Positions 3-59,116 of a stretch of 64,000 nt of DNA are shown in pieces. The notes beneath the pieces were generated by a model. It did no database searches. It saw nothing but the letters and a program-made list of their open reading frames with translations, and was not told the DNA's origin. The DNA lies in NCBI RefSeq assembly GCF_039654945.1, contig NW_027361727.1:26412001-26476000 (forward strand), read 5' to 3'. Within the stretch, counting starts at the first letter, position 1. Every line of letters begins with the position of its first letter. This stretch comes from Dendrobates tinctorius (taxonomy: Eukaryota). The position numbers were made by a program, and so were the translations under genes.

Positions 3-1031
3 ATGCAAACTTTGACGCACCTTAAGGAGCAGGCGTCTGCAGCCAATGTTGATGAGGAGGAAGAGGAGGAGGGAATCCTTGATGACATTCAGCCATTGTT
101 TGCTCAGGGACCTCTCCTGGACGAGGTGGAGGAAGAAGAGGAGGAGGAGGAGGATGATGGGGATGATTACTTAGGGGAGGAGGATGCATCTCGTGGGGCA
201 AGTGAAAATGTTGGCGTGGCAAGGTCTGGTACAGGGTTTGTGCGTGACTGGAGGGATGTGGATTTGCCAGAAAGTGCTCCTCCACCCAGCACTCGCAGTG
301 CATCATTGACACCGGGAACATTGGCCCACATGTCAGATTATGCCTTGCGGATCCTAAAAAGGGACCCCCGCATTGCCAAAATGATGAACGATGACGACTA
401 CTGGTTGGCCAGCATCCTGGATCCACGCTATAAAGGCAAATTACAAAACATCATGCCACAGGAGAACCTTGACCTAATATTGGCTAATAAACAAGCAACT
501 CTGGTAAATCAGTTGCTTGAGGCATTCCCAGCACACAGCAGCGGTGATGGTTCTCACACGAGCCGTACGGGCCGGGGGCAGCTTGGCAGAGGTGTTCGTG
601 GTGCACACAGCAGAAGTGGCGTTGGAGACAGGGGTTTCATGACAATGTTGTGGACTGATTTTTCAAATACCGCTCACACAACTGGTAATACTGCATCGAT
701 GGAAAGTGACAGGAGACAGCAGTTGTCAACTATGGTTACAAACTACTTTTCCTCCCATATCGATGTTCTCCCACACAGGTCATTCCCCTTTGACTATTGG
801 GCCGCTAAACTGGACACCTGGCCTGAATTGGCCCAATATGCCTTACAGGAGCTCGCTTGCCCAGCTGCAAGTGTGCTATCGGAAAGAGTCTTCAGTGCAG
901 CTGGATCAATCCTGACGACAGAAAAAAGGACCCGTCTGTCAACCCAAAATGTGGATGATCTAACCTTCATTAAAATGAACCACGCATGGGTTTCCAAGGA
1001 TTTTGTCCCACCTTCCCCTGATGACACATAG
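3..1031 (+). CDS. hAT (ZBED-like) transposase, C-terminal fragment including the hAT dimerization domain; ORF open to the window edge
   Basis: Motifs ASILDPRYK and FDYWAAKLDTWPELAQYALQELACPAASVLSERVFSAAG...KRTRLSTQNVDDLTFIKMN, including the catalytic E of SERVFS. Confidence 0.92.
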   Translation: MQTLTHLKEQASAANVDEEEEEEGILDDIQPLFAQGPLLDEVEEEEEEEEDDGDDYLGEEDASRGASENVGVARSGTGFVRDWRDVDLPESAPPPSTRSASLTPGTLAHMSDYALRILKRDPRIAKMMNDDDYWLASILDPRYKGKLQNIMPQENLDLILANKQATLVNQLLEAFPAHSSGDGSHTSRTGRGQLGRGVRGAHSRSGVGDRGFMTMLWTDFSNTAHTTGNTASMESDRRQQLSTMVTNYFSSHIDVLPHRSFPFDYWAAKLDTWPELAQYALQELACPAASVLSERVFSAAGSILTTEKRTRLSTQNVDDLTFIKMNHAWVSKDFVPPSPDDT

Positions 1032-1450: not shown

Positions 1451-3076
1451 AATCCATACTGTGCCTGACACCGTCTGAGCCTGCCTCCTGAGACATATAT
1501 TTTGAATGTGTACGCTATCCATACATGTTATCCGGGGATACGGTACCCTTTCTAACCTTTGTGCAATCACGTGCAATCCATACTGGGCCTAACACCGTCT
1601 GAGCCTGCCTCCTGAGACATATATTTTGAATGTGTACGCTATCCATACATGTTATCCGGGGATACGGTACCCTTTCTAACCTTTGTGCAATCACGTGCAA
1701 TCCATACTGTGCCTTACACCGTCTGAGCCTGCCTCCTGAGACATATATTTTGAATGTGTACGCTATCCATACATGTTATCCAGGGATACGGTACCCTTTC
1801 TAACCTTTGTGCAATCACGTGCAATCCATACTGGACCTGACACCGTCTGAGCCTGCCTCCTGAGACATATATTTTGAATGTGTACGCTATCCATACATGT
1901 TATCCAGGGATACGGTACCCTTTCTAACCTTTGTGCAATCACGTGCAATCCATACTGGGCCTAACACCGTCTGAGCCTGCCTCCTGAGACATATATTTTG
2001 AGTGTGTACGCTATCCATACATGTTATCCAGGGATACGATACCCTTTCTAACCTTTGTGCAATCACGTGCAATCCATACTGGGCCTGACACCGTCTGAGC
2101 CTTCCTCCTGAGACATATATTTTGAATGTGTACGCTATCCATACATGTTATCCAGGGATACGATACCCTTTCTAACCTTTGTGCAATCACGTGCAATCCA
2201 TACTGGGCCTAACACCGTCTGAGCCTGCCTCCTGAGACATATATTTTGAGTGTGTACGCTATCCATACATGTTATCCAGGGATACGGTACCCTTTGTAAC
2301 CTTTGTGCAATCACGTGCAATCCATACTGGGCCTAACACCGTCTGAGCCTGCCTCCTGAGACATATATTTTGAATGTGTACGCTATCCATACATGTTATC
2401 CGGGGATACGGTACCCTTTCTAACCTTTGTGCAATCACGTGCAATCCATACTGGGCCTAACACCGTCTGAGCCTGCCTCCTGAGACATATATTTTGAATG
2501 TGTACGCTATCCATACATGTTATCCGGGGATACGGTACCCTTTCTAACCTTTGTGCAATCACGTGCAATCCATACTGTGCCTGACACCGTCTGAGCCTGC
2601 CTCCTGAGACATATATTTTGAATGTGTACGCTATCCATACATGTTATCCAGGGATACGGTACCCTTTCTAACCTTTGTGCAATCACGTGCAATCCATACT
2701 GGGCCTAACACCGTCTGAGCCTGCCTCCTGAGACATATATTTTGAATGTGTACGCTATCCATACATGTTATCCGGGGATACGGTACCCTTTCTAACCTTT
2801 GTGCAATCACGTGCAATCCATACTGGGCCTAACACCGTCTGAGCCTGCCTCCTGAGACATATATTTTGAATGTGTACGCTATCCATACATGTTATCCGGG
2901 GATACGGTACCCTTTCTAACCTTTGTGCAATCACGTGCAATCCATACTGTGCCTGACACCGTCTGAGCCTGCCTCCTGAGACATATATTTTGAATGCGTA
3001 CGCTATCCATACATGTTATCCAGGGATACGGTACCCTTTCTAACCTTTGTGCAATCACGTGCAATCCATACTGGGC
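1451..3076. repeat. 124-bp tandem repeat (~13 copies) internal to the hAT element
   Basis: Unit aatccatactgggcctaacaccgtctgagcctgcctcctgagacatatattttg...gtgcaatcacgtgc recurs with an exact 124-bp period and few substitutions. Confidence 0.97.
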
Positions 3077-3921
3077 GTGAGAACGGCTGGCGAGCTGTTA
3101 AGCAAGCTACAGCACCTGTCCAGACAAGTACAGGGATTCCCTAGCGAGGAGACTTATTTGATTGTTTTCAATGTTGGGACAGCAATTTTTGGGGAGCACT
3201 ATACTCTGGAGAATGATAGATGGGGCCCACCATACACTGGAACATTCCAAAGGTGGACATCAGACACTGGAGCAGCATTTACAGGGCCCATTATACACTA
3301 GAGCATTAGAAATGGGGCCCATTATGTTTGGAGCATTATTTGGGCCCATAAGACAGTGGAGCTTCATCCATGGGGACCAACATATACTGTAGCATTATGT
3401 GGAGCTCATCATATACTGTTTCAAACATTATATGGGACCAATGATTCTGTATGGAGAAATAGATGGGCCTTGTCATGAGATGTAAAAAGTGAGGTATTTT
3501 TCATTGTACTATACCGCTATTTATCTGCCGTATCGGAGCATGATGAGTTGTGGTATGTGTTAAAGGGGCGCTCTTTCGCCCATGGCACATGAAAACCTGC
3601 AGCCAGCCCTCCCCCCCACAACTTTAGCCAAATAACCCCCATTTTTCAGTGAGTAACTTGTATTATGAAGTTAATTAAGGTTGACAAGCTTAAGTAAGAA
3701 GAATTGATGCTTTTGGCATTCAAATGGGCACTGTAGGTGTGTTTCCTGTCCTCCTCTCACTGCCGACTTTTATTCCCCATTGACTTACATTGGGTTTCGT
3801 GTTTCGGGACGACCCCGACTTTTCCCTATAATCGGACGATCTTGCTCGACCCGACTTTTGGAAAAGTCGGGTTTCACGAAACGAAACGCGACCCTAAAAA
3901 AACAAAAGTCGCTCAACTCTA

Positions 3922-4797
3922 CGGTTCAGAGTCCATTACCATTGACGGTTCAGAGTCCATTATTACTGCAGTGTGATCTCTGTTCACTGACATGGAAAGC
4001 TCAGAGTCCATTATAATGTTTGTATCTGTTGCAGACATACATTCACTAGCACCAGTGAGCGGGGTCTCACACACAGCACTGAGCGGGGTCTCGCACACAG
4101 TGACAGTACAGGGGACATTTACTTCATCACTTACAGGAGCTGAGCTCCATTCATTGCTGCACACAGAGTCCACTGCGGTTAACCCCTCGGTTGCTGACAC
4201 ACTTTCCTCTGTAGCGCTCACAGCATTGTCTGCTGCCTCAGACCCCTCACATTGTGCGGCTGATATAAGTGCTGCATTTCTTACCAGACATCCTTGCCCC
4301 ACACTGTGCACAATTTCAGATTTAATGTCCTTATTACTAATGGAGTGTTTTCTATTCTCCTTCTGGGCTCTGGCTCCCCTCTTTTTCTCCATAGCCCAAG
4401 TTTCCTTTCTGGGCACAGAGTTCACATCTATGTCCAGGTTTCCTTTCCGAATGTCCAGCTCTCGTCTGCAAACATCCAGGCTCTCACATTTCATCAGTTT
4501 TATCTTTGGATTAGTCTCATTCTTAATTTCATCTTGTAATTTGCTGATTTGCATTTCCAGCTTAAAAATGCTTTGCCTTGTAACTTTACCACTCAATCCA
4601 GCAACATAACAAGCAGGTTTAGAAGACTGACCAGCCACCATTTCCAGCTTTCCATTACCATCAGGTCCATGCGGCAGGCCACACTCCAGGCTAGGGGCTT
4701 TCCCTGGATCATTAGCCCAGCTTCCCTCCCCTCCAACTGGGTCAGAAGCCATGCCTCCGCCCTGCTGGGAGCTCACAAACACACGTCTATCCTCTCC
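3922..4797 (-). mobile_element. 5' portion of a Tx1-like non-LTR retrotransposon (ORF1 N-terminus, ATG at 4752), truncated by the hAT insertion
   Basis: Uninterrupted ~277-aa frame with a predicted coiled coil and Ser/Glu-rich repeats, cut exactly at the hAT TIR. Its 5' end GAGAGGATAGACGTGTGTTTGTGAGCTC and N-terminus MASDPVGGEGSWANDPGKA resemble those of the element at 9421 (GAGAGGTTGTGTGTTTGTAGCTC; MSGASPGGGHPGRGNSPSKA). The diagnostic zinc-knuckle domain is not in the window. Confidence 0.6.
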
Positions 4798-7700
4798 TAT
4801 GGACAAGAATATAACTACTATAATACTGCTCCTACGTCCAAGAATATAACTACTATAATATTGCTCCTATGTACAAGAATATAGCTACTATAATACTGCT
4901 CCTATGTACAAGAATATAACTACTATAATACTGCCCCTATGTACAAGAATATAACTACTATAATACTGCTCCTATGTACAAGAATATAACTACTATAATA
5001 CTGCCCCTATGTACAAGAATATAACTACTATAATACTGCTCCTATGTACAAGAATATAACTACTATAATACTGCTCCTACGTCCAAGAATATAACTACTA
5101 TAATATTGCTCCTATGTACAAGAATATAGCTACTATAATACTGCCCCTATGTACAAGAATATAACTACTATAATACTGCTCCTATGTACAAGAATATAAC
5201 TACTATAATACTGCTCCTATGTACAAGAATATAACTACTATAATACTGCTCCTACGTCCAAGAATATAACTACTATAATATTGCTCCTATGTACAAGAAT
5301 ATAGCTACTATAATACTGCCCCCTATGTACAAGAATATAACTACTATAATACTGCCCCTATGTACAAGAATATAACTACTATAATACTGCCTCCTATGTA
5401 CAAGCATATAACTACTATAATACTGCCCCTATGTACAAGAAGATAATTACTATAATACTGCCCCTATGTACAAGACTATCACTACTATAATACTGCCCCT
5501 ATGTACAAGAATATAACTACTATAATACTGCTCCTATGTACAAGAATATAACTACTATAATACTGCCCCTATGTACAAGAATATAACTACTATAATACTG
5601 CTCCTATGTACAAGAATATAACTACTATAATACTGCCCCTATGTACAAGAATATAACTACTATAATACTGCTCCTATGTACAAGAATATAACTACTATAA
5701 TACTGCTCCTACGTCCAAGAATATAACTACTATAATATTGCTCCTATGTACAAGAATATAGCTACTATAATACTGCCCCTATGTACAAGAATATAACTAC
5801 TATAATACTGCTCCTATGTACAAGAATATAACTACTATAATACTGCTCCTATGTACAAGAATATAACTACTATAATACTGCTCCTACGTCCAAGAATATA
5901 ACTACTATAATATTGCTCCTATGTACAAGAATATAGCTACTATAATACTGCCCCCTATGTACAAGAATATAACTACTATAATACTGCCCCTATGTACAAG
6001 AATATAACTACTCTAATACTGCCTCCTATGTACAAGCATATAACTACTATAATACTGCCCCTATGTACAAGAAGATAATTACTATAATACTGCCCCTATG
6101 TACAAGACTATCACTACTATAATACTGCCCCTATGTACAAGACTATCACTACTATAATACTGCTCCTATGTACAAGAATATAACTACTATAATACTGCTC
6201 CTATGTACAAGAATATAACTATTATAATACTGCTCCTATGTACAAGACTATAATTACTATAATACTGCCCCTATGTACAAGAATATAACTACTATAATAC
6301 TGCTCCTATGTAAAAGAATATAACTACTATAATACTGCTCCTATGTACAAGAATATAACTATTATAATACTGCTCCTATGTACAAGACTATAACTACTAT
6401 AATGCTGCCCCTATGTACAAGAAGATAATTACTATAATACTGCCCCCTATGTACAAGAATATAACTACTATAATATTGCCCCCTATGTACAAGAATATAA
6501 CTACTATAATACTGCCCCTATGTACAAGAATATAACTACTATAATACTGCCCCCTATGTACAAGAATATAACTACTATAATACTACCCCTATGTACAAGA
6601 ATATAACTACTATAATACTGCTCCTATGTACAAGAATATAACTACTATAATACTGCTCCTATGTACAAGAATATAACTACTATAATACTGCTCCTATGTA
6701 CAAGAATATAACTACTATAATACTGCTCCTACGTCCAAGAATATAACTACTATAATATTGCTCCTATGTACAAGAATATAGCTACTATAATACTGCCCCC
6801 TATGTACAAGAATATAACTACTATAATACTGCCCCTATGTACAAGAATATAACTACTATAATACTGCCTCCTATGTACAAGCATATAACTACTATAATAC
6901 TGCCCCTATGTACAAGAAGATAATTACTATAATACTGCTCCTATGTAAAAGAATATAACTATTATAATACTGCTCCTATGTACAAGACTATAACTACTAT
7001 AATACTGCCCCTATGTACAAGAATATAACTACTATAATACTGCTCCTATGTATAAGACTATAACTACTATAATAAAGCCCCTATATACAAGAATATAACT
7101 ATTATAATACTGCTCCTATGTACAAGACTATAACTACTATAATACTGCCCACTATATACAAGAATATAACTAAAATAATACTGCTCCTATGTACAAGAAT
7201 ATAACTACTATAATACTGCCACTATGTACAAGAATATAACTACTATAATACTGCTCCTATGTACAAGAATATAACTACTATAATACTTCCCCTATGTACA
7301 TGAATATAACTACTATAATACTGTTCCTATGTAAAAGAATATAACTACTATAATTCTGCCCACTATGTATAAGACTATAACTACTATAATAATGCCCCTA
7401 TATACAAGAATATAACTACTGTAATACTGCCCCTATGTACAAGAATATAACTACTATAATACTGCCCACTATGTACAAGAATATAACTACTATAATACTG
7501 CCCACTATGTACAAGAATATAACAACTATAATACTGCCCCTATGTACATGAATATAACTACGATAATACTGCTCCTTTGTACAAGAACATAACTACTATA
7601 ATACTGCCCACTATGTATAAGAATATAACTACTATAATACTGCCCCTATATACAAGAATATAACTACTATAATACCGCTCCTATGTAGAAGAATATAACT

Positions 7701-9420
7701 ACTATAATACTGCCCCTATGTACAAGAATATAACTACTAAAATACTGCCCACTATGTACAAGATTATAACTACTATAATACTGCCCCTATGTACATGAAT
7801 ATAACTACTATAATACTGCTCCTATATACAAGAATATAACTACTATAATACTGCTCCCTATGTACAAGAATATAACGACTGTAATACTGCCCACTATGTA
7901 TAAGAATATAACTACTATAATACTGCCCCTATATACAAGAATATAACTACTATAATACTGCTCCCTAAGTACAAGAATATAACTACTATAATACTGCTCC
8001 CTATGTACAAGAATTTAACTACTATAATACTGCCCACTATGTATTAGAATATAACTACTATAATACTGCCCCTATGTACATGAATATAACTACGATAATA
8101 TTGCTCCTATGTACAAGAATATAACTACTATAATACTGCTCCCTATGTGCAAGAATATAACGACTGTAATACTGCCCACTATGTATAAGAATATAACTGC
8201 TATAATACTGCCCCTGGATGCAAGTATATAACTACTATAATACTGTCCCTATGTACAAGAATATAACTACTATAATACTTCTCCCTATGTACAAGAATAT
8301 AACTACTATAATATTGCCCACTATGTATAAGAATATAACTACTATAATACTGCCCCTATATGCAAGAATATAACTACTATAATACTGCCCCTATATACAA
8401 GAATATAACTACTATAATACTGCCCCTATATACAAGGATATAACTACTATAATACTGCCCACTATGTACAAGAATTTAACTACTATAATACTGCTCCCTA
8501 TGTACAAGAATATAACGACTGTAATACTGCCCACTATGTATAAGAATATAACTACTATAATACTGCCCCTATATACAACAATATAACTACTATAATACTG
8601 CTCCCTAAGTACAAGAATATAACTACTATAATACTGCTCCCTATGTACAAGAATTTAACTACTATAATACTGCCCACTATGTATTAGAATATAACTACTA
8701 TAATACTGCCCCTATGTACATGAATATAACTACGATAATACTGCTCCTATGTACAAGAATATAACTACTATAATACTGCTCCCTATGTGCAAGAATATAA
8801 CGACTGTAATACTGCCCACTATGTATAAGAATATAACTGCTATAATACTGCCCCTGGATGCAAGTATATAACTACTATAATACTGTCCCTATGTACAAGA
8901 ATATAACTACTATAATACTGCTCCCTATGTACAAGAATATAACTACTATAATATTGCCCACTATGTATAAGAATATAACTACTATAATACTGCCCCTATA
9001 TGCAAGAATATAACTACTATAATACTGCCCCTATATACAAGAATATAACTACTATAATACTGCCCCTATATACAAGGATATAACTACTATAATACTGCCC
9101 ACTATGTACAAGAATATAACTACTATAATACTGCCCCTATATACAAGAATATGACTACTATAATACTGCCCTTATGTACAAGAATATAACTACTATAATA
9201 CTGCCCCTATATACAAGAATATAATTACTATAATACTGCTCCAATGTACAAGAATATAACTACTATAATACCGCTCCGATGTAGAAGAATATAACTACTA
9301 TAATACTGCCCCTATGTACAAGAATATAACTACTATAATACTGCCACTATGTACATGAATATAACTACGATAATACTGCTCCTATGTACAAGAATATAAC
9401 TACTATAATACTGCCTCCTA
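4794..9420. repeat. 35/36-bp AT-rich satellite, left array (~130 copies)
   Basis: Unit TATGTACAAGAATATAACTACTATAATACTGC(T/C)CC, with a variable C-rich segment. Confidence 0.98.
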
Positions 9421-12400
9421 GCTGAGAGGTTGTGTGTTTGTAGCTCTCCTGATGTCTGGAGCAAGCCCAGGGGGAGGCCACCCTGGGCGGGGTAACTCCC
9501 CAAGCAAGGCCCAGGCTTCCAGGCCTAGACTTGGAAGTAACGCTCAAGTTGTGTCTAAGGCGGATGCAAGTCCCAAAGTTGTTTCTGAGGGAAAGAAAGC
9601 TCAGAATGGAAGCAGCAGCAGCAAGAAAGATGAAGCTGTGAAAGTGCAAAAAGTAACGGAACAAGGAAAAGCCATGGCTGTGGGTAAGAAAGTTCCGGTT
9701 AAGCAGTCGGCCAGCCAAGGCAAACAGAGTGAAGGACAACTAGGAGAAATCCAGAAGAAATCTACTGGTGAGAAGCTGAATGGAGGAAAGCAGCCTGCAG
9801 CTCAGGAGGTGCCATCACCAACTTCAGGTGTGCAGCTGACTCCCAGCAGACAGAGGAGAACCTCACTGGAGAGACAGACGCTCCAGGAGAACCTGCAGCA
9901 GAAGCATGTGGTGGCCAGCATAGCGAGCTCTGGGCGCACAAGGTCGCAGTCAGGTGGCAGCAGTAAAAGTGCTGTGGAGCCTGGAATCACGAAACCAGCG
10001 GTGGTGAAAGTTAAGGAGACGTCTGGTTTCAAGCATCCAGGGACATTGCTGAAAGCAGGATCCCAGGAGGAGACGCCATGTGCACCCGAGCTTCAGATCG
10101 CAGAGGAGATCCCAGGACTGGTCAAGAGGCTCGGTGAGTTACAGCAGCACAAAGACTTGCTGCAGAAGCAAATAGACATGGGCTATAAGGTAAAGGCTGC
10201 TAATCCTGGTGGAGATCACACCTTTTGTGATCAGACTCTGAACATGCTTGGCATACAGCTGGCAAAAGTGGTGACGGACATGGACTGTGTCCTAGAGAAG
10301 ATGGGGCCCCTGGCAGAGACTTATAGGAGCCAGGAACTGTTTATGTCACACAAGCAGGACTCTGCAGGTTCCAGCTCAGACATTGTCCCAGGTGAGCCCC
10401 AGAAGCCGGTGCGGCCAGTGCTGCAGCCTGCAAGTTTCTGCTTCCAAAAGGGTCAAATACTGCAGCCGCAGCAGCATGTTATGCAGATTCCATCAGGTGT
10501 ACCACAAGTCTCAGAATGCCCAGCACAGCAGCCTGCAGCAGATTCCAAGCAGCAGCATGGACTGCACTTTCCAGCAGAGGGACTACAAGTCTCAGAATGC
10601 CAAGCACAACAGTTGGGCAGTGGACATGTGCCGGTCATTTCTGATGGTGCCCAGCAGGGCCCTGATGCTGGGGATAACCGCACTGTATCTGGGGGGTTGG
10701 GGGCTTGGCACAGTATCTTTGGTGGACGCTGCACAGTCTGATAATGACATTGATGCTGATGATAACAATGTGCATGATAATGTCTGTGATTTCCCCCCTT
10801 TAATTTCAAGCACACAAGGTGTGGCTGCCCCTCCTGCTGCAGACCTTCACCCCGTCAGTCAACCCAATGTGACCCCGCACGGTACCCCCAGTAATGCCTG
10901 GAGTCGTGGTGCTCCGTCCTTTACCTCTGGTACCAACTATACAGGCCAGGCGTTTAAAAGGAGAAACGTGGTGCGTTTCCGGCACAGAGGTGCCAAGGAG
11001 GACCTACCAGACAGGAGATTTGTCGTCAGGGAGCTCTTGTGCCACCAGATGGGGTTTGTGCCAGTCAGCATCCTGGAGTGATTAATCTTCCAGACAGGCA
11101 GGGCTATGATGTCAGCTTTAAGCTCATGTCTGACCTGGACAGATTCTGGTCTAGTTTCCCCAAGTTTAGAGACACGGAGGGCTGGAGTAAGTTCAGCTTT
11201 ATTCCTATCTCTAAGCCAGATACTGTCACCGTAAATGTCATCTTCTGGAATGAGTCTGTTCCCCCGCAGGTGTGGCTCCGGAGGCATTGTGACCTGGTCT
11301 CTGACCTCACCAAAAGCAGAGACAGTGATGGGATCTGGACGGGAGGGTGGCGGGTTTTGGTGAAACTGCGCCAATGCAATAACATCACTGCCCATTTACC
11401 CAACTCCTTCTTTATTGGGAGGGAGAGGGGTGTGTGTTTCTATCCAGGGCAGCCTCGTAAGTGCTTTAAATGTGGCAAGGCAGGTCACCTGGCAATTACC
11501 TGTACTGTGGTGAAGTGCAACCTGTGTGGGGAGGTCGGCCATCTAGCTGCAGACTGCCAGAACATCAGGTGCAACCTCTGTGGGAAGATCGGTCACCCTC
11601 ACAGGGACTGTCCAGACGCCTGGCACAATATCTGTAAGGACTTTCCTGACGAGGACTTGGTGGCAGGGGCAGAGATTCTGGAGGAGGCAGCTTTACTGTC
11701 AGGGGAAATACTGACCAGACCAGAGGTCCACCAGGGGTCTACTCAGCTAACACCAGAGCAGCAGGGTTCAGAGAGAGAACAGGGGAGAATGGAGGTTGTA
11801 CCTCAGGGGCAGCGGTCACAGGAAGGCATTACTTCAGTGCTACCATCTGTGTCTGAAGAGTATAGCAATAATCAGAAAAGGAAGAAAAAGGACAAGGCCT
11901 CCCGTAAACCTGAGGGGTATGACACTGGCCAAGGAGCCGGGAAGAAATTCCAGAGTTCTGCAGGTGTAATGGTCGTATCTAACAGGTTTGATGTTCTGTC
12001 TGAGTCTGACGGCGATTTTGAAGATGACCTTAAGAGAATTGACGCAGAGTGTGATAGGGACGTAGAGGACTGTCCTCCGCCAAAGCGGAAGCCCTTACCT
12101 GAGGGCACTCGGGTAGAGTCTGAGATGGAGACCGGTGGTGAACAGAATAACTCCGACTCAGATCTGTGACGCTGTCAACCAGATAATGTCCAAACTCAGA
12201 TAGGGAAAATCATTAGGAGAAATTAGGAAATGTTAAGATAGAGAAGGATGAGTCACTGGGTAGGAACATGATGAGCTCTGTTTGCAAAGTGTTTTTTTTT
12301 TTTTTTTTTCTCTCCTCAAACTAGGAGTATGGACTCTAAGTTAATTTGATATGTATAAACTGGATATGTAATGAATGTATGTACAATCCTAGTGAATTCA

Positions 12401-12455
12401 GTTTTGTATTATTGGAGGAATGTTATTTGGATTTGTTTGGTTTTTACAATAAAAA
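9421..12455 (+). mobile_element. Tx1-clade non-LTR element, ORF1-only (non-autonomous), inserted in the 35-bp satellite
   Basis: 31-nt 5'UTR, ORF1 from 9452 to 12169, a ~290-nt T-rich 3' region ending in AATAAAAA, and satellite on both sides with overlapping TGC(C/T)CCTA (imperfect TSD). No endonuclease or RT sequence is present. Confidence 0.88.
9452..12169 (+). pseudogene. Tx1-type ORF1 (ZCCHC3-like: coiled coil, RRM-like region, 3 CCHC knuckles) with two frameshifts (~10690-10740 and ~11075)
   Basis: Joined frames give FKRRNVVRF...YDVSF...VIFWNESV...WLRRHCD...DGIWTGGWRVLVKLR...HLPNSFFIGRERGVCFYPGQPRKCFKCGKAGHLAITC..CNLCGEVGHLAADC..CNLCGKIGHPHRDC. This closely resembles the ZCCHC3/Tx1 ORF1 domain (recognised from memory). 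Confidence 0.88.
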
Positions 12456-15090
12456 TTGCCCCTATGTACAAGAATATAACTACTATAATACTGCCCACCA
12501 TGTATAAGAATATAACTACTATAATACTGCCCCTATGTACAAGAATATAATTACTATAATACTGTCCCTATGTACAAGAATATAACTACTATAATACTGC
12601 CTCTATGACCAATAATATAACTACTATAATACTGCCCCTATGAACAAGAATATAACTACTATAATACCGCTACTATGTAGAAGAATATAACTACTATAAT
12701 ACTGCCCCTATGTACAAGAATATAACTACTATAATACTGCCCACTATGTACAAGAATATAACTACTAGAATACTGCCCCTATGTACATGAATATAACTAC
12801 TATAATACTGCTCCTATATACAAGAATATAACTACTATAATACTGCTCCCTATGTACATGAATATAGCTACTATAATACTGCTCCTATATACAAGAATAT
12901 AACTACTATAATACTGCTCCTATATACAAGAATATAACTACTATAATACTGCCCCTATGTACATGAATATAACTACGATAATACTGCTCCTATGTACAAG
13001 AATATAACTACTATAATACTGCTCCCTATGTGCAAGAATATAACGACTGTAATACTACCCACTATGTATAAGAATATAACTACTATAATACTGCCCCTGT
13101 ATGCAAGTATATAACTACTATAATACTGTCCCTATGTACAAGAATATAACTACTATAATACTGCTCCCTATGTACAAGAATATAGCTACTATAATACTGC
13201 CCACTATGTATAAGAATATAACTACTATATTACTGCCCACTATGTACAGGAATAAAACTACTGTAATACTGCTCCTATGTACAAGAATATAACTACTATA
13301 ATACTGCCCCTTATACAAGAATATAACTACTATAATACTGCCCCTATATACAAGAATATAACTACTATAATACTGCCCCCTATATACAAGAATATAACTA
13401 CTATAATACTGCTCCCTATGTACAAGAATATAACTACTATAATACTGCCCACTATGTATAAGAATATAACTACTATATTACTGCCCACTATGTACAGGAA
13501 TAAAACTACTGTAATACTGCTCATATGTACAAGAATATAACTACTATAATACTGCCCCTTATACAAGAATATAACTACTATAATACTGCCCCTATATACA
13601 AGAATATAACTACTATAATACTGCCCCCTATATACAAGAATATAACTACTATAATACTGCCCACTGTGTACAAGAATATAACTACTATAATACTGCTCCT
13701 ATGTACAAGAATATAATTACTATAATACTGCCCTTATGTACAAGAATATAACTACTATAATACTGCCCCTATCTACAAGAATATAACTACTATAATACTG
13801 CCCCTATATACAAGAAAATATAACTACTATAATACTGCCCACTATGTACAAGAATATAACTACTATAATACTGCCCCTATATACAAGAATATAACTACTA
13901 TAATACTGCCCCTATATACAAGAATATAACTACTATAATACTGCTCCCCATATACAAGAATATAACTACTATAATACTGCCCACTATATACAAGAATGTA
14001 ATTACTATAATACTGCTCCTATGTACAAGAATATAGCTACTATAATACTGCCCCTTATACAAGAATATAACTACTATAATACTGCCCCTATATACAAGAA
14101 TATAACTACTTTAATACTGCCCCTATATACAAGAATATAACTACTATAATACTGCCCCTACTGTATATACAAGAATATAACTACTAAAATACTGTCCACT
14201 ATGTACAAGAATATAACTACTATAATACTGCCCACTATGTACAAGAATAAAACTACTATAATACTGCTCCTATGTACAAGAATATAACTGCTATAATACT
14301 GCCCCTATGTACAAGAATATAACTGCTATAATACTGCCCCTATATACAAGAATATAACTACTATAATACTGCCCCTATATACAAGAATATAACTACTATA
14401 TTACTGCCCCCTATATACAAGGATATAACTACTGTAATACTGCCCCTATGTACAAGAATATAACTACTGTAATACTGCCCCCTATGTACAAGAATATAAC
14501 TACTATAATACTGCCCACTATGTACAAGAATATAACTACTATAATACTGCCCATATGTACAAGAATATAGCTACTATAATACTTCCCCTATATACAAGAA
14601 TATACTATAATACTGCCCCCTATGTACAAGAATATAACTACTATAATACTGCTCCTATGTACAAGAATATAACTACTATAATACTGCCCCTATATACAAG
14701 AATATATCTACTATAATACTGCCCACTATGTACAAGAATATAACTACTATAATACTGCCCCTATGTACAAGAATATAACTACTATAATACTGCCCCTATA
14801 TACAAGAATATATCTACTATAATACTGCCCCCTATGTACAAGAATATAACTACTATAATACTGCTCCTATGTACAAGAATATAACTACTATAATACTGCC
14901 CCTATATACAAGAATATATCTACTATAATACTGCCCCCTATGTACAAGAATATAACTACTATAATACTGCCCCTATGTACAAGAATATAACTACTATAAT
15001 ACTGCCCCTATGTACAAGAATATAACTACTATAATACTGCTCCTATGTACAAGAATATAACTACTATAATACTGCCCCTATGTACAAGAA
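12456..15090. repeat. 35/36-bp satellite, right array (~74 copies)
   Basis: Same unit and orientation as 4794-9420. Confidence 0.98.
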
Positions 15091-15659
15091 AATACTGTCT
15101 TGTATTTCTGTAATTCATTGAAGTAATACGTTTGTGATTTTCTATTTTTATGTTCTCTCTATAATAACCTCATCGCTCAGAGTGTGCAATTTAATATTCC
15201 AAATAGTCCTATTTATCTGTTCATTTTCTTTTCGTTTTTACATGCTCAGTGAAATCAATATGGAAGTTCTCTCTATTGTGATGAGGTCAGTTTGTGTAAT
15301 GTAACAATATTTGCAGGACTTAATAGAATATTTGCTAAACATTGGTCTCATTAAGAGCTCGTGGCTTCTGGGTGTTTTCGATTTATAGTGCAATTCTTCA
15401 AAGTCTCCTGTAAGTTTCGGTGCAGTTCATAATAGGAGGACAAAGCAATTAATGGAACTATTTGGAAACGCTTTTACAGGGGCTGGAATTTTGCTGCATC
15501 TTTAAGTTTATATTTGAAAGGTTTATCAGTTTAGTTTATATAAAGTATACTTTTATTTTATACTTAGTTCAACAGATATATGTTGTAGTCATACCCTTAT
15601 CTGGAGTCTTTATAACTCTAAAATATTCACACCTGATTATTATGTCCTTTTTCGGTGTT

Positions 15660-19164: not shown

Positions 19165-20690
19165 TCTCTACAGGAAGTGGGGCGGGTTTTTACCTTACTA
19201 TAGGAAGTTGGGTCTGATCTCTACCTCTCTACAAGATGTTAAGGTGGGGTTATAGCTCTCTACAGTAAGTGGGGGCTGGTCTTTGTATCTTTATGTGAAG
19301 CAGAGATAGGTCTTTATCTCTCTACAGGAAGAGAGCACAGGTCATTACCTCTCAACAAGAAATAGGGGTGGGTCTTTGCTTTTCTACTTTAAGTGGGGGT
19401 GGGTCTCTTTCTCTCTATAGTAAGTGGGGGTGGGTCTCTATCTCTGCAGTAAGTGGGGGTGGGTCTCTTTCTCTCTATAGTAAGTGGGGGTGGGTCTGTT
19501 TCTCTCTATAGTAAGTGGGGGTGGGTCTCTTTCTATAGTAAGTGGGGGTGGGTCTCTTTCTCTCTGCAGTAAGTGGGGGAGGGTCTCTTTCTCTCTATAG
19601 TAAGTGGGGGTGGGTCTCTTTCTCTCTATAGTAAGTGGGGGTGGGTCTCTTTCTCTCTATAGTAAGTGGGGGTGGGTCTCTTTCTATAGTAAGTGGGGGT
19701 GGGTCTCTTTCTCTCTATAGTAAGTGGGGGTGGGTCTCTTTCTCTCTATAGTAAGTGGGGGTGAGTCTCTTTCTCTCTATAGTAAGTGGGGATGGGTCTC
19801 TTTCTCTCTATAGTAAGTGGGGTGGGTCTCTATCTCTGCAGTAAGTGGGGGTGGGTCTCTTTCTCTCTGCAGTAAGTGGGGGTGGGTCTCTTTCTCTCTG
19901 CAGTAAGTGGGGGTGGGTCTCTTTCTCTCTATAGTAAGTGGGGGTGGGTCTCTTTCTCTCTGCAGTAAGTGGGGGTGGGTCTCTTTCTCTCTCTAGTAAG
20001 TGGGGTGGGTTTCTTTCTCTCTATAGTAAGTGGGGGTGGTTCTCTTTCTCTCTATAGTAAGTGGGGGTGGGTCTCTTTCTCTCTATAGTAAGTGGGGGTG
20101 GGTCTCTTTCTCTCTATAGTAAGTGGGGGTGGGTCTCTTTCTCTCTATAGTAAGTGGGGGTGGGTCTCTTTCTCTCTGCAGTAAGTAGGGGTGGGTCTCT
20201 TTCTCTCTGCAGTAAGTAGGGGTGGGTCTCTTTCTCTCTATAGTAAGTGGGGGTGGGTCTTTGTTTCTCTACAGGAAGAAGAGGTGGATCTTTGTCTCTG
20301 AAGGAAAAGGGAGAAGATCTTTAACTCTATGCTGGAAATTGGGGCAGGTTTTTGTCTCTACATAAAGTGAGGGTGGGTATTTATCTCTCTATAGAAAGTG
20401 GGGGCAGATAGTTGAGTCACTAGAGGAAGTTAGGGTGGGTCTTTACCTCTCTACAGGAAGTGAGGGTGGATCTTAAGAAGTTAGGTGAACTTTTTGACTC
20501 CCTACAAGAATTGGGGGTGGGTTTAAATCTTCTACAGAAAGAGGGAGCAGATCTTTGTCTCCTCACAGGAAGTGGGGACGCATTTATATTTCTATACAGG
20601 AAGTTTGGGTGGGTTTATGTATTTCTACTGAAAATTGGGGCAGGAGGGATTATCTCCCTAAAGAAATTGGGGCTGGTCTATAAGAAATGG
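19165..20690. repeat. G-rich ~31-bp minisatellite (homogeneous core ~19390-20260, degenerate flanks)
   Basis: Unit GTAAGTGGGGGTGGGTCTCTTTCTCTCTATA. Confidence 0.95.
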
Positions 20691-25066: not shown

Positions 25067-25267
25067 TTGACAGACCCATGATGCAGTCGGTCCAGGTCCA
25101 AGAGTCTTCCCCCTGGCAACCCTACTGCGCAGCTAAATGGTTCCAGGCATGGAGCAGAGGAGGTAAACCCTTTCTTGTCCTTCTTGTGCTTCAACCCCTT
25201 ACATTAGTAGCAAGAGTAGGCATTTATATAGGTACACTTTAAACATCTGTCGGATGTTTTGCTGGAT

Positions 25268-26829
25268 TAGTATGGCCCCATGTGGGATCAGTATGGTCCA
25301 ATGTGGGATCAGTATGGTCCAATGTGGGATCAGTATGGCTCAATGTAGGATCAGTATGGTCCAATGTGGGATCAGTATGGTCCAATGTGGGATCAGTATG
25401 GTCCAATGTGGGATCAGTATGGCCCAATGTAGGATCAGTATGGTCCAATATAGGATCAGTATGGTCCAATGTGGGATCAGTATGGCCCAATGTGGGATCA
25501 GCATGGTCCAATGTGGGATCAGTATGGTCTAATGTGGGATCAGTATGGTCCAATGTAGGATCAGTATGGTCCAATATAGGATCAGTATGGTCCAATGTAG
25601 GATCAGTATGGCCCAATGTGGGATCAGTATGGCCCAATGTGGGATCAGTATGGCCCAATGTGGGATCAGTATGGTCCAATGTAGGATCAGTATGGTCCAG
25701 TGTAGGATCAGTATGGTCCAAGGTAGGATCAGTATGGTCCAATGTGGGATCAGTATGGCCCAATGTGGGATCAGTATGGTCTAATGTGGGATCAGTATGG
25801 TCTAATGTGGGATCAATATGGTCCAATGTGGGATCAGTATGGCCCAATGTGGAATCAATATGGCCCAATGTGGGATCAGTATGGCCCAATGTGGGATCAG
25901 TATAGTCTAATGTGGGATCAGTATGGTCCAATGTGGGATCAGTTTGGTCCAATGTGGGATCAGTATGGTCCAATGTGGGATCAGTATGGTTGAATGTGGG
26001 ATCAATATGGCCCAATGTGGGATCAGTATGGTCAAATGTGGGATCAGTATGGCCCAATGTGGGATCAGTATGGTCTAATGTGGGATCTGTATGGTCTAAT
26101 GTGGGATCAGTTTGGTCCAATCTGGGATCAGTATGGTCCAATGTGGGATCAGTATGGTCCAATGTGGGATCAGTATGGTCCAATGTGGGATCAGTATGGC
26201 CCAATGTGGGATCAGTATGGTCTAATGTGGGATCAGTATGGTCTAATGTGGGATCAGTATGGTCTAATGTGGGATCAGTTTGGTCCAATCTGGGATCAGT
26301 ATGGTCCAATGTGGGATCAGTATGGTCCAATGTGGGATCAGTATGGTCCAATGTGGGATCAGTATGGTCCAATGTGGGATCAGTATGGCTCAATGTGGGA
26401 TCAGTATTGTCTAATGTGGGATCAGTATGGTCCAATGTGGGATCAGTATGGTCCAATGTGGGATCAGTATTGCTCAATGTGGGATCAGTATGGTCCAATG
26501 TGGGATCAGTATTGTCTAATGTGGGATCAGTATGGTCCAATGTGGGATCAGTATGGTCCAATGTGGGATCAGTATTGCTCAATGTGGGATCAGTATGGTC
26601 CAATGTGGGATCAGTATGGTCTAATGTGGGATCAGTATGGTCCAATGTGGGATCAGTATGGTCCAATGTGGGATCAGTATGGTCCAATGTGGGATCAGTA
26701 TGGTCCAATGTGGGATCAGTATGGTGTAATGTGGGATCAGTATGGTGTAATGTGGGATCAGTATGGTCCAATGTGGGATCAGTATGGTGTAATGTGGGAT
26801 CAGTATGGTGTAATGTGGGATCAGTATGG
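25268..26829. repeat. 21-bp minisatellite (~74 copies)
   Basis: Unit ATGTGGGATCAGTATGGTCCA. Confidence 0.98.
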
Positions 26830-30964: not shown

Positions 30965-31702
30965 ATAAAGATACTTTTTATTACCTGAAGCACTGAGCAG
31001 ATAGACCGACGTAAGACCAATGTGATACATGAGATGACATGTCAAATAGAACTTACAGCCACAACAAGATGAAATCATTTAGTTGTAATCCTCAAGAATT
31101 CACTTTGTTTTGTTCTTCAGATGAATTGACCCCCGACTTATATACTTTATATCATCAGAGGAATACCAATAAAGGGGAATATCACTGTGTGTAACCCAAT
31201 CAATATCCCTCTGCCAGACGTACCATGTCTTCGTCAATATCTTGACGTATTTCTTCATCTGCAAAGTTCCATAAGTGCAGGCGAGAAGGGTAATTGGTCT
31301 TTGTTGTAAATTCTGTATTTTCACTGTATACTGAATTGTTGGGTCTCATTATAGAGGTATTCGGAGATTCTGCGCACACAAGAGTAGTGGCTGCAACAGT
31401 AAATCTTCAAGCCGATGGGGTGATTTATAGAAAAGCATCAGTATCTTTCCTTATTAAAGCTACAGAAGCAGCAGAAGAAGAAAAACTTATTGATGCTGAC
31501 ATTCCATAGACTTTCACATATTCATACAATTATAATTACTGCATAGCACTAAAAAATTCGATATCTTGCAATTTTCACACTGACCGCTGGGGATATTGTA
31601 GACTCTTATTTCCTGTTCTAAGGAAATCTACAATGTACATTAGCAACAGAAGACTGACTGATCCCATCTGTTATATAGAAACTTCTCATGTTATGTGTTA
31701 TT

Positions 31703-32375
31703 AGTCATTGTACAGGAGGAGGAGGTGAGCTGTGACATCACCTATTGTGACTGGTGGATCCTGTGTTATACTGTATATACCTGTGTTGTCAGTCATTGTA
31801 CAGGAGGAGGAGGTGAGCTGTGACATCACCTATTGTGAATGGTGGATCCTGTATTTTCTACTGTATATAGAGGTGTTACCAGTCATTGCACAGAAGGAGG
31901 AGGTGAGCAGTGACATCACCTATTGTGACTGGTGGATCCTGTGTCATCTACTGTATATAGAGGTGTTATCAGTCATTGTACAGGAGGAGGAGGTGAGCTG
32001 TGACATCACCTATTGTGAATGGTGGATCCTGTGTTATACTGTATATAGCTGTGTTATCAGTCATTGTACAGGAGGAGGAGGAGGTGAGCTGTGACATCAC
32101 CTATTGTGAATGGTGAATCCTGTGTTATCTACTGAATATAAAGGTGCTATCAGTCTTTGTACAGGTTGTACAGGAGGAGGAGGTGAGCTGTGATATCACC
32201 TATTGTGAATGGTGGATCCAGTGTTATCCACTGTACATAGAGGTGTTATGAGTCAATGTACAGGAGGAGGAGGTGAGCTGTAACATCACCTATTATGAAT
32301 GGTGGATCCTGTGTTATCTACTGTATATAGAGGTGTTATCAGTCATTGTACAGGAGGAGGAGGTGAGCTGTGAGC
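31703..32375. repeat. ~90-bp tandem repeat (~7 copies)
   Basis: Unit agtcattgtacaggaggaggaggtgagctgtgacatcacctattgtgaatggtggatcctgtg... Confidence 0.93.
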
Positions 32376-32394
32376 TGTCAAGACTGGCATGTCA

Positions 32395-32469
32395 AACCAG
32401 ATCTCACACTTTGCACTGATGAAGGGTAATGATCCCGAAACACAGTGTCTGCAAATTGAGATTCTGGTT
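32395..32469 (+). ncRNA. Type I hammerhead ribozyme (canonical core), retrozyme/PLE-type
   Basis: Stem I TTTGCA/TGCAAA, extended by aaccagatctca/tgagattctggtt; CTGATGA at 32416-22; stem II GGG/CCC; GAAA at 32437-40; minimal stem III CAC-A-GTG; GUC cleavage site at 32449. Confidence 0.85.
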
Positions 32470-59100: not shown

Positions 59101-59116
59101 CATGATCCTGTCAGCC
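47198..59116. repeat. 48-bp satellite, ~11.9 kb (~250 copies)
   Basis: Unit TAATATCCCACATCATCCCGTCAGCCAGAGCCACCGGACTACTACCCC, strongly C/A strand-biased. Confidence 0.99.

What the first reader, a model, noticed from the sequence alone, without database searches (positions are those of the whole stretch)
3922..15090. Candidate satellite-targeted Tx1 retrotransposon system: two related families joined to the same site of a 35-bp satellite in opposite orientations
Seen: two different elements with similar 5' ends (GAGAGG..GTGTGTTTGT.AGCTC) and similar N-termini (GG..G..N.P.KA) have their 5' junctions in the same C-rich TGC(C/T)CCTA segment of the monomer. One is on the minus strand (~4794-4797) and one on the plus strand (9420/9421); the plus element's 3' junction (12455) falls in the same segment. 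Known: Tx1-clade endonucleases are often sequence-specific (Xenopus Tx1L/Tx2L into tandem repeats of Tx1D/Tx2D; Keno into U2; Kibi/Koshi into microsatellites), and TRAS/SART insert in opposite orientations into insect telomeric repeats. Inferred: this satellite is a dedicated safe-harbour target shared by at least two Tx1 lineages.
Basis: partly seen in the sequence, partly recalled or inferred. Interest (0 to 1): 0.85.

Follow-up and report, generated by a model that had tools for sequence, protein, structure and literature searches.

The report
Satellite-targeting frog LINE families
A 35-base tandem repeat in a poison-frog genome is the landing site of several related jumping genes, which insert at one fixed point of the repeat unit; this is a clear new example of a known strategy, site-specific retrotransposition into repeated DNA.

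Summary
The window has two arrays of a 35-bp satellite (4796-9420 and 12457-15094).

**Family A** (9421-12456, + strand) is a 3.04-kb element with ORF1 only. **Family B** (3923-4793, - strand) is a 5' fragment of a second ORF1-bearing family.

In the window's own 6.36-Gb genome:
- 30 of 30 fetched A copies and 30 of 30 fetched B copies join the satellite at the same phase, in opposite orientations.
- Exact-pattern counts agree: 276 of 297 A 5' ends, 302 of 322 A 3' ends and 47 of 56 B 5' ends carry the satellite junction.

Neither window element encodes an endonuclease or reverse transcriptase. These are supplied by a third family elsewhere in the genome, here called Auto. Auto is about 6.3 kb, with an ORF1 of about 935 aa and an ORF2 of 1135 aa (APE endonuclease, RT, zinc finger). 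It shares A's 5' leader, 3' tail, junctions and orientation.

The same satellite and junctions occur in Ranitomeya imitator, R. variabilis and Anomaloglossus baeobatrachus.

Insertions avoid the common TGCTCC monomer variant.

Still open: Tx1-clade membership is likely, but no RT tree was built. B's 3' end, and whether B has an ORF2, were not found.

The scan had already noted this stretch and similar ones elsewhere in this genome.

The parts
3923..4793 (-). Family B, 5' fragment (element positions about 1-900). It holds a 25-45 nt 5' UTR and the N-terminal part of ORF1 (ATG near 4752). The copy breaks off at 3923.
   Evidence: blastn against a longer B copy covers window 4800-3923 at 94% identity, and nothing else in the window matches. 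The ORF is at 3919-4806. A matching B ORF1 C-terminal piece lies 11.2 kb further on, on the same strand, outside the window. I therefore infer a nested insertion rather than a true end.
4794..4802 (-). B 'leader': CCATAGGAG on the minus strand. It is satellite-like but nearly invariant among B copies.
   Evidence: 47 of 56 exact B 5' cores are preceded by TGTNCATAGGAGA, with N = C in 38 and A in 9. 22 of 30 loci have the unusual C.
4796..9420 (+). 35-bp satellite array 1, consensus TGCCCCTATGTACAAGAATATAACTACTATAATAC, 131 copies.
   Evidence: TRF. Genome-wide there are 65,304 exact consensus monomers and 58,691 of the TGCTCC variant.
9412..9420 (+). A 'leader': TGCCTCCTA. It is satellite-like, and I read it as carried by the element rather than sampled from the target.
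   Evidence: 276 of 297 exact A 5' cores are preceded by TGCNNCCTAG, with NN = CT in about 96 of the 100 listed. The TGCCTCC variant makes up only 2.2-2.5% of monomers in the flanking arrays.
9421..12456 (+). Family A: an ORF1-only LINE-like element of 3036 bp. It has a 25-nt 5' UTR, ORF1 (9446-12169, broken here by two frameshifts near 10,707 and 11,076), and a 287-nt 3' UTR ending ACAATAAAAAT.
   Evidence: ORFs. Pfam RBD_ZCCHC3_1st, RBD_ZCCHC3_2nd and zf-CCHC. About 40 pairs of 5' and 3' ends lie 3.03-3.14 kb apart. About 60 of 114 scored copies have open frames of 917-931 aa. Other copies differ by indels at 10707 and 11076 (table 4).
12457..15094 (+). 35-bp satellite array 2, in register with array 1 across the insertion; 75 copies.
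   Evidence: TRF. If 9412-12456 is removed, the monomer reads ...ATAATAC|TGCCCCTATG without a break.

Best explanation
The 35-bp satellite is the specific insertion target of a group of L1-superfamily, Tx1-like non-LTR retrotransposons.

**The autonomous element (Auto).** It is about 6.3 kb and is not in this window. Its ORF1 has two ZCCHC3-type RNA-binding domains and three CCHC knuckles. Its ORF2 has an APE endonuclease, a reverse transcriptase and a zinc-binding tail.

**Proposed insertion steps (inferred).**
1. The endonuclease nicks the bottom strand of a monomer between ...ATAATAC and TGCCCC...
2. The freed 3'-OH primes reverse transcription on an RNA ending ...ACAAUAAAAAU.
3. The 5' end is joined with the help of a 9-nt target-like leader (TGCCTCCTA) that the RNA carries.

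**Family A** (in the window) is an ORF1-only relative. It keeps its own intact ORF1 of about 927 aa but shares Auto's first 140 nt or so, its last 35 nt or so, its junctions and its orientation. I infer that it is copied in trans by Auto's ORF2 protein, as HAL1 or HeT-A are thought to be.

**Family B** is a distant ORF1-bearing lineage. It enters the same C-rich core of the monomer on the opposite strand, most likely through a different endonuclease that I could not find.

**Shown:** architecture, junctions, copy statistics, monomer-variant bias, and conservation in three other species.

**Inferred:** nick positions, trans-mobilisation, the role of the leader, and a separate enzyme for B.
For: **Junctions**
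- 30/30 A and 30/30 B loci carry the in-phase satellite junction, with different upstream monomers and different array edges.
- Exact counts (reversed-pattern controls were 0 unless stated): A 5' core 297, of which 276 have the leader. A 3' core 322 (control 48), of which 302 are followed by TGYC. The 3' junction 21-mer occurs 391 times. B 5' core 56, of which 47 have the flank.

**The autonomous partner**
- An Anomaloglossus locus (L064) has the satellite, then an A-like 5' end, then ORF1 and ORF2 with Exo_endo_phos, RVT_1 and zf-RVT.
- Its EN domain finds 9026 candidates in the window's genome. The top 150 are 90-93% identical, and about half sit in 1135-aa open frames.
- Auto-type 5' ends (520 exact matches) lie 2.7-2.9 kb upstream of about 30 of about 37 EN hits on contigs C9-C54.
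- They lie about 6.3 kb upstream of the same 3' junction in about 17 pairs.
- Two Auto 5' ends in hand (L035, L045) show ctgcctccta|GCTGTGAGG.

**Shared termini**
- The first 140 nt of A and Auto align with score 177.
- The last 35 nt or so are conserved among A, an own-genome non-A 3' end (L012), and the R. imitator A-like and Auto copies.

**Target discrimination**
- Of the first 100 of 540 3' flanks, about 68 are TGCCCC, about 24 TGCCCCC and 1 TGCTCC.
- Genome-wide the TGCCCC and TGCTCC monomers are almost equally common, 65,304 against 58,691.

**Other species**
- R. imitator L061 and L067 have the same 3' junction, with satellite on both sides.
- R. variabilis L063 and R. imitator L062 hold a third ORF1-only family about 1.6 kb upstream of the satellite; its ...ACAATAAAAA tail (seen in L063) is about 100 bp from the array.

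**Superfamily**
- ORF2 matches human L1 ORF2p across EN and RT at E = 8.5e-84, against 1e-21 for R2.
- RRM/CCHC-type ORF1 in non-mammalian vertebrates is described as typical of Tx1 (PMC5203782).
- Tx1 elements are known for target specificity (PMC4494074).
Against: - The fetched loci are the best-scoring, youngest copies, and exact-pattern counts also favour young copies. Old or truncated copies were not examined.
- Some copies are clearly segmental duplicates, for example on C21, C77 and C59.
- No RT phylogeny with labelled Tx1 and L1 references could be built. The names of the nearest proteins were uninformative.
- The strong bias of the 3' flank could mean that TTGCCCC is partly copied from the RNA rather than chosen by the endonuclease.
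- For B, no 3' end and no ORF2 were found, and two predicted 3' junction patterns gave nothing consistent.
- Transcription was not shown.
Confidence: 0.85

Rival explanations
1. The elements were not targeted. One or a few chance insertions into the satellite were later multiplied together with the satellite, by array expansion, unequal crossing-over and segmental duplication.
For: - Some copies are evidently duplicated blocks. L017 and L018 share the same upstream flank.
- There are regularly spaced clusters on C21, C59 and C77.
Against: - The upstream arrays differ in length, from 91 bp to more than 1.5 kb, and end against unrelated sequences at different phases in at least 12 distinct contexts.
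- The monomers next to the junction differ between copies.
- Element copies are about 98% alike, while the satellite is about 90%.
- Three or four distinct families share one junction: A, Auto, a third family and B.
- The 3' flank strongly avoids the TGCTCC variant.
- The same junction is kept in three other species.
Confidence: 0.04
2. The satellite is part of the elements, as a repeated 5' or 3' tail made during retrotransposition. The arrays would then be products of the elements rather than their target.
For: - Arrays are dispersed over many contigs, and some are very short: 91-114 bp next to elements.
- The elements carry a satellite-like leader.
Against: - Only 2 of about 14 visible left edges of arrays abut an element 3' end. 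The others abut unrelated DNA or ordinary DNA-transposon insertions.
- A/Auto and B sit in opposite orientations in the same arrays, which a transcribed tail cannot explain for both.
- There are more than 120,000 exact monomers against hundreds to a few thousand element ends.
- Removing the insert restores the satellite register.
Confidence: 0.04
3. Family B uses the same endonuclease as A and Auto. The enzyme would make a staggered break around the C-rich core, and B's RNA would be primed from the other strand's 3'-OH, so no second enzyme would be needed.
For: - The 5' junctions of A and B lie 2-3 bases apart around the same core, in mirror orientation.
- No B-type ORF2 was found.
- In at least two loci there is no room, or barely room, for a full ORF2 downstream of B's ORF1 (coordinates).
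Against: - B's ORF1 is only 37-45% identical to the A and Auto ORF1s, and B shares only a 15-nt 5' motif with them.
- B has no A-type ...CAATAAAAA tail next to the reverse satellite.
- The known opposite-orientation pair TRAS/SART uses separate enzymes (my own knowledge).
- My search could not have seen a divergent B ORF2, because only the top 150 of 9026 EN candidates are scored.
Confidence: 0.2
4. Family A is not a mobile element but a multicopy host gene family or set of retrogenes related to ZCCHC3 that happens to lie in satellite DNA.
For: - Relatives are annotated as 'zinc finger CCHC domain-containing protein 3-like' in several frogs.
- A third family sits at what looks like the same locus in two Ranitomeya species, which looks gene-like.
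Against: - There are hundreds of copies at 97-99% identity with defined termini at one satellite phase.
- The 5' leader and 3' tail are shared with an EN/RT-encoding element.
- In Anomaloglossus the homologous ORF1 is followed directly by an overlapping ORF2.
Confidence: 0.02

Closest known systems
Tx1L of Xenopus laevis, and other target-specific Tx1-clade LINEs: Keno in U2 genes, Kibi and Koshi in (TC)n and (TTC)n, Tx1-Mar in Mariner-N4_AMi, Mutsu in 5S rDNA
   Same: - Two ORFs: a CCHC-knuckle ORF1, and an APE-EN + RT ORF2 of the L1 superfamily.
- Insertion at one position and in one orientation of a repeated target.
- Some Tx1 families carry target-derived or snRNA-derived 5' heads, and target co-transcription has been proposed for them (PMC4494074).
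- Tx1L also sits inside tandem internal repeats of its target, Tx1D.
   Different: - The target here is a free-standing 35-bp satellite with more than 120,000 exact monomers, not a gene, a microsatellite or a DNA transposon.
- Insertions discriminate between two equally common monomer variants.
- Clade membership by RT phylogeny was not tested here.
HAL1 (half-L1) of mammals and HeT-A of Drosophila: ORF1-only non-LTR elements
   Same: - Family A keeps a long intact ORF1 but has no ORF2.
- It is as abundant as its presumed autonomous partner.
- Like HeT-A with TART/TAHRE, it shares a specialised repeated target with that partner.
   Different: - A shares both termini and a precise sequence-specific junction with its partner.
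- Its ORF1 is of the RBD + CCHC (ZCCHC3-like) type, not Transposase_22.
- Trans-mobilisation is inferred only.
TRAS and SART of Bombyx mori, in telomeric TTAGG repeats
   Same: Two LINE lineages occupy the same tandem repeat at fixed positions in opposite orientations.
   Different: - TRAS and SART belong to the R1 clade, and each has a characterised strand-specific endonuclease.
- Here the second lineage (B) is known only from its 5' 1.9 kb. Its 3' junction and enzyme are unknown.
- The repeat is not telomeric as far as can be seen.
ZCCHC3, the vertebrate host protein whose Pfam domains PF23057 and PF23058 match ORF1
   Same: Two RNA-binding domains followed by three CCHC knuckles, in the same order.
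   Different: ZCCHC3 is a single-copy host gene reported to restrict L1 (PMC10351740). Here the architecture is the ORF1 of a multicopy mobile element, preceded by a long, repeat-rich N-terminal region.

Membership tests
L1 superfamily / Tx1 clade non-LTR retrotransposon | ORF2 with an N-terminal APE-type endonuclease followed by a reverse transcriptase | tested here: met
   Met for the autonomous relative (L064): Exo_endo_phos 3.6e-14, RVT_1 1.1e-36, zf-RVT. Copies at 90-93% identity in 1135-aa frames exist in the window's genome. Not present in the window's own two elements.
L1 superfamily / Tx1 clade non-LTR retrotransposon | ORF2 closer to L1-group enzymes than to other LINE groups | tested here: met
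   Human L1 ORF2p E = 8.5e-84 over residues 20-899; R2 proteins 1e-21 over the RT only.
L1 superfamily / Tx1 clade non-LTR retrotransposon | RT-domain phylogeny places the element inside Tx1 rather than L1 proper | not tested
   No labelled Tx1 or L1 references could be obtained. The nearest proteins are unnamed 'reverse transcriptase domain-containing' entries from Xenopus (55%), Pelobates (44%) and Latimeria (31%).
L1 superfamily / Tx1 clade non-LTR retrotransposon | Type I ORF1 (RNA-binding domains plus CCHC knuckles) rather than Transposase_22 | tested here: met
   A. B. Auto relative. PMC5203782 describes this type in non-mammalian animals as consistent with Tx1.
Sequence-specific LINE | Most copies are flanked by the same target at the same position and orientation (Kojima's working threshold is more than 20% of flanks, PMC4494074) | tested here: met
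   30/30 and 30/30 loci. 93% of A 5' ends, 94% of A 3' ends and 84% of B 5' ends by exact patterns.
Sequence-specific LINE | The element's endonuclease cleaves the target at the insertion site | not testable with these tools
   Needs a nicking assay with recombinant EN on monomer duplexes.
ORF1-only non-autonomous LINE (HAL1 / HeT-A type) | Full-length copies have ORF1 and both termini but no ORF2 | tested here: met
   Window copy 9421-12456. About 40 further copies are 3.03-3.14 kb between ends. Open frames of 917-931 aa in about 60 of 114 scored copies. R. imitator L061 has the same structure.
ORF1-only non-autonomous LINE (HAL1 / HeT-A type) | Shares the terminal sequences recognised by an autonomous partner and is mobilised by it | tested here: inconclusive
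   Shared termini and junctions are shown. Mobilisation in trans is an inference.
Opposite-orientation pair in one tandem repeat (TRAS/SART type) | Two lineages, each with its own strand-specific endonuclease, at fixed sites on opposite strands | tested here: inconclusive
   Fixed 5' junctions in opposite orientation are shown. B's ORF2 and 3' junction were not found.

The most novel reading that the evidence does not exclude
One satellite hosts a small, long-lived community of elements:
- an autonomous Tx1-like element;
- an ORF1-only dependant that has kept its own intact and quite different ORF1 since before the split of the window's species from Ranitomeya;
- an unrelated-looking lineage that enters the same 8-9-bp core from the other strand.

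The enzyme reads the monomer finely enough to reject a variant that differs by one base. Elements and satellite variants may therefore be co-evolving, with TGCTCC monomers acting as escape variants. Other first-stage notes, unchecked, suggest that further Tx1 families in this genome each target a different satellite (86-bp, 40-bp). If so, this would be a radiation of satellite-specific LINEs in poison frogs.
Probability: 0.25. Interest if true: 0.7.

Novelty: new member of a known kind. Interest (0 to 1): 0.55.

Why it matters
Site-specific LINEs show how a parasite can multiply without hitting genes. Their endonucleases are also of interest as natural sequence-specific integration tools.

This system offers:
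- A short, well-defined 35-bp target present in huge numbers.
- A natural single-base contrast between accepted and avoided monomers (TGCCCC against TGCTCC).
- Many young copies of both the autonomous element and an ORF1-only dependant, which allows study of how ORF1-only elements borrow ORF2 protein in a vertebrate.
- A second lineage on the opposite strand.
- Part of an account of how repeats pile up in the very large genomes of dendrobatid frogs.

The principle itself, Tx1-type target specificity, is already known.

Tried and rejected
**Fetching more copies.** All later own-genome work used coordinates and exact-pattern counts only.

**Naming the ORF2 clade.** The names of 30 cluster representatives were uninformative. 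No Tx1 or L1 labelled references were available, so I built no tree.

**Finding B relatives in public proteins.** Searching with the whole B ORF1 fragment gave one spurious low-complexity hit. Searching with its RBD region gave none.

**Finding B's ORF2 through divergent ORF2 representatives.**
- P0127 (Anomaloglossus, L066) is a different Tx1-like family with no 35-bp satellite.
- P0214 is from the same Pelobates contig as P0097.

**Predicting B's 3' junction.**
- A non-satellite triplet in front of ACATAGGRGCAG... gave 29 heterogeneous hits.
- An A-type CAATAAAAA tail within 30 nt of the reverse satellite gave 2 hits.
- Both predictions were rejected.

**Bounding B's length.** Perfect-monomer positions at the one visible locus on C9 were inconclusive.

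**Transcription.** No run on record is RNA. The runs laid were assembled contigs, which cannot show starts or strand. The 'joints' that skip about 3.05 kb are satellite contigs and are not evidence of empty sites.

**Other checks.**
- A full-length ORF2 query against the own genome failed twice. The 250-aa EN domain worked.
- X. laevis locus L065 holds a lone ORF1-like gene in an intron, with no ORF2.
- The LINE ORF2 at 59777-62284 in the window is only 22% identical to Auto ORF2 and ends in an (ATT)n tail, so it is unrelated to this system.

Full report
**What is in the window**

TRF finds a 35-bp satellite, consensus TGCCCCTATGTACAAGAATATAACTACTATAATAC, at 4796-9420 and 12457-15094. A 3036-bp insert lies between the two arrays, at 9421-12456 on the plus strand. 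I call it family A.
- It begins GCTGAGAGGTTGTGTGTTTGTAGCTC, directly after ...ATAATAC TGCCTCCTA.
- It ends ...TTTTTACAATAAAAAT, and the satellite resumes with TGCCCCTATG.
- Its only long reading frame, 9446-12169, is broken here into three pieces. It encodes the two ZCCHC3-type RNA-binding domains and CCHC zinc knuckles.
- There is no endonuclease or reverse transcriptase.

At the left edge of the first array, on the minus strand, a second element (family B) begins AGGATAGACGTGTGTTTGTGAGCTC at 4793. On that strand it is preceded by the reverse-complement satellite ending ...CTTGTCCATAGGAG. It runs to 3923, where it breaks off.

**Genome-wide test of the junctions**

The window's genome is 6.36 Gb in 830 contigs. 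It is a dendrobatid frog, and I infer it is close to Dendrobates tinctorius:
- the best ORF1 hit is 89% identical to a Ranitomeya imitator protein;
- the D. tinctorius record is withheld as 'very near'.

I fetched the 30 best copies of each 5' end with 1.5 kb on each side.
- All 30 A copies read ...ATAATACTGCCTCCTAG|CTGTGAGG.
- All 30 B copies read ...TATATTCTTGT(C/A)CATAGGAG|AGGATAGACG.

The monomers further upstream differ between copies. The arrays vary from 91 bp to more than 1.5 kb, and they end against unrelated sequences at different phases. Only one pair of loci shares a flank. These are therefore mostly independent contexts.

Each count comes with a reversed-pattern control.

| Pattern | Exact matches | With satellite flank |
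|---|---|---|
| A 5' core | 297 | 276 with the TGCNNCCTAG flank (93%) |
| A 3' core GTTTTTACAATAAAAAT | 322 (control 48) | 302 followed by TGYC (control 0) |
| 3' junction 21-mer | 391 | n/a |
| B 5' core | 56 | 47 with flank (84%) |

About 40 pairs of A 5' and 3' ends on one strand lie 3.03-3.14 kb apart, so the ORF1-only form is the family's normal form.

**The missing enzyme**

A relative of A's ORF1 in Anomaloglossus baeobatrachus (locus L064) lies in the same satellite.
- Its A-like 5' end reads ...ATAATACTGCCCCCAAG|CTGTGAGGTTGTGTG.
- Its 804-codon ORF1 frame is followed by an overlapping ORF2 with Exo_endo_phos, RVT_1 and zf-RVT domains.

The 250-aa EN domain of that ORF2 finds 9026 candidates in the window's genome. 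The 150 scored are 90-93% identical, and about half lie in open frames of 1135 aa.

A 5' end that differs from A's after GTGTGT (GCTGTGAGGTTGTGTGTC) occurs 520 times.
- On contigs C9-C54 it lies 2.7-2.9 kb upstream of about 30 of about 37 EN hits, on the same strand.
- In about 17 cases it lies 6.28-6.31 kb upstream of the same TACAATAAAAAT|TGCCCC junction.

So the genome holds an autonomous family, which I call Auto, of about 6.3 kb. Its ORF1 is about 935 aa and its ORF2 is 1135 aa. It has the same junctions and orientation as A.

Supporting detail:
- Two Auto 5' ends are in loci I hold (L035, L045). Both read ctgcctccta|GCTGTGAGG.
- A and Auto share their first 140 nt (alignment score 177) and their last 35 nt or so. 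Their ORF1s are about 71% identical in DNA.
- ORF2 matches human L1 ORF2p over EN and RT at 8.5e-84, against 1e-21 for R2. This places it in the L1 superfamily.
- The RBD + CCHC ORF1 and the site specificity fit the Tx1 clade (PMC5203782, PMC4494074). I could not build a labelled RT tree.

**How the junction is built**

Removing 9412-12456 restores a seamless monomer. The TGCCTCCTA at the 5' side and the TGCCCCTA at the 3' side therefore look like an 8-9-bp target-site duplication. They are not two samples of one monomer, however.
- The 5' copy is TGCCTCC in about 96 of the 100 listed junctions. That variant makes up only 2.2-2.5% of monomers in the flanking arrays.
- I conclude that the leader is inherited with the element. 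Either transcription starts in the upstream monomer of a source copy, or the leader serves as a homology patch for joining the 5' end. Similar ideas have been put forward for other target-specific LINEs and for Tx1 heads (PMC4494074).

The 3' flank is also not a random sample.
- Among the first 100 of 540 junctions, about 68 are TGCCCC, about 24 TGCCCCC and only 1 TGCTCC.
- Perfect TGCCCC and TGCTCC monomers are almost equally common in the genome, 65,304 against 58,691.
- Either the endonuclease or priming step rejects T at monomer position 4, or part of TTGCCCC is copied from the RNA. I cannot separate these two.

From the junctions I infer the following:
1. A first nick on the bottom strand, opposite ATAATAC^TGCCCC.
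2. Priming on an RNA ending ...AAAAAU. One T at the junction is not from the satellite.
3. A second cut about 8-9 nt downstream.

**Family A as an ORF1-only dependant**
- Among 114 scored copies of A's ORF1 C-terminal half, identity is 97-100%, and about 60 lie in open frames of 917-931 aa.
- The 30 fetched copies are on average 98.2% identical in their first 800 nt.
- The window's copy is a broken one. Other copies differ by indels at 10707 and 11076 (table 4).
- R. imitator has an A-like, ORF1-only copy (83-87% identical) with the identical 3' junction. Provided the window's species is indeed not R. imitator, the ORF1-only lineage is older than the split between the two species.
- Mobilisation by Auto's ORF2 protein is the natural reading of the shared ends and junctions. 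It is an inference.

**Family B**
- In longer copies, B's ORF1 has the same architecture: RBD1, RBD2 and three CCHC knuckles, after a repeat-rich N-terminal half.
- It is only 37-45% identical to the A, Auto and public ORF1s.
- About 95 copies of its ORF1 C-terminal part exist, with open frames up to about 900-1380 aa.
- B shares with A only a short 5' motif, GTGTGTTTGT(G)AGCTC; 8 of 2000 shuffles reach its score.
- Its satellite-like leader CCATAGGAG carries an unusual C in 38 of 47 copies, so it too seems to be carried by the element.
- A piece of B ORF1 lies 11.2 kb beyond the break at 3923, on the same strand and just outside the window. I therefore infer that the window copy is split by nested insertions rather than truncated.
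- I could not find B's 3' end or any ORF2. Two predicted junction patterns failed, and divergent ORF2 candidates in public data belonged to other families.
- Whether B has its own endonuclease or uses the other strand of Auto's break stays open. I favour a separate enzyme.

**Other species and other families**
- R. imitator locus L067 holds an Auto-like element (ORF2 89% identical to L064's) with the satellite on both sides. Its 3' end reads ...TTTTTATAATAAAAAT|TGCCCC.
- R. imitator L062 and R. variabilis L063 hold a third ORF1-only family (69% identical to A) about 1.6 kb upstream of the same satellite. Its ...ACAATAAAAA tail, seen in L063, lies about 100 bp from the array.
- The satellite consensus is 97-99% identical in all four genomes.
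- Other first-stage notes in this genome report the same ORF1-only element, a near-complete Tx1 element in this 35-bp satellite, and candidate Tx1 families in 86-bp and 40-bp satellites. I tested only the first two kinds.

**Verdict**

The finding is real, and its interpretation holds in the main. It is a well-supported new example of a known kind, the target-specific L1/Tx1-type LINE. Three features add interest:
- an abundant ORF1-only partner with an intact ORF1;
- discrimination between monomer variants;
- a second lineage on the opposite strand.

The main gaps are the RT phylogeny, B's 3' half, and biochemical proof of the nick sites.

Noticed in passing
window 1451-3076: A 124-bp tandem repeat, 13 copies at 97% identity. 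It lies inside the DNA that separates the window's B fragment from its presumed continuation.
   Followed up: no
window 3-1031 (+): An ORF with a hAT-family C-terminal dimerisation domain (PF05699, 4.7e-10): a hAT transposase remnant. It may be part of the nested insertion that splits family B.
   Followed up: partly
window 47198-59116: A 12-kb array of a 48-bp satellite, 250 copies at 94% identity. It produces long artefactual ORFs on the minus strand with spurious Pfam hits.
   Followed up: partly
window 59420-64000 (-): An unrelated LINE. Its ORF2 (59777-62284; RVT_1 and Exo_endo_phos_2) is only 22% identical to the Auto ORF2. It ends in an (ATT)n tail about 300 bp from the 48-bp satellite. 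It is probably of CR1/L2 type.
   Followed up: partly
window 19390-20299, 25264-26829, 31695-32373: Further tandem repeats with units of 31 bp, 21 bp and 90 bp. The last one abuts the stretch where another first-stage note reports a hammerhead ribozyme (32377-32560).
   Followed up: no
L015, L027, L029 (upstream flanks); L009, L036, L039: The 35-bp arrays are also hit by ordinary DNA transposons. These are short inverted-repeat elements inserted after ...CTATAA, and Tc1-like ends at TA. They sit at various phases, unlike the LINE families.
   Followed up: partly
L033, L037 and other B copies, element positions about 990-1125: B's ORF1 contains a 33-bp in-frame tandem repeat (PPAAGEGSG-like) whose copy number varies between copies. 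This explains much of the spread in ORF1 length.
   Followed up: partly
L066 (Anomaloglossus baeobatrachus): Another Tx1-like family: ORF2 is 44% and ORF1 38% identical to Auto. It is not associated with the 35-bp satellite, and its target was not examined.
   Followed up: no
L062 / L063 (R. imitator / R. variabilis): The third ORF1-only family lies in what looks like the same genomic context in both species and is annotated as a gene. It could be an old fixed insertion or a domesticated copy.
   Followed up: no
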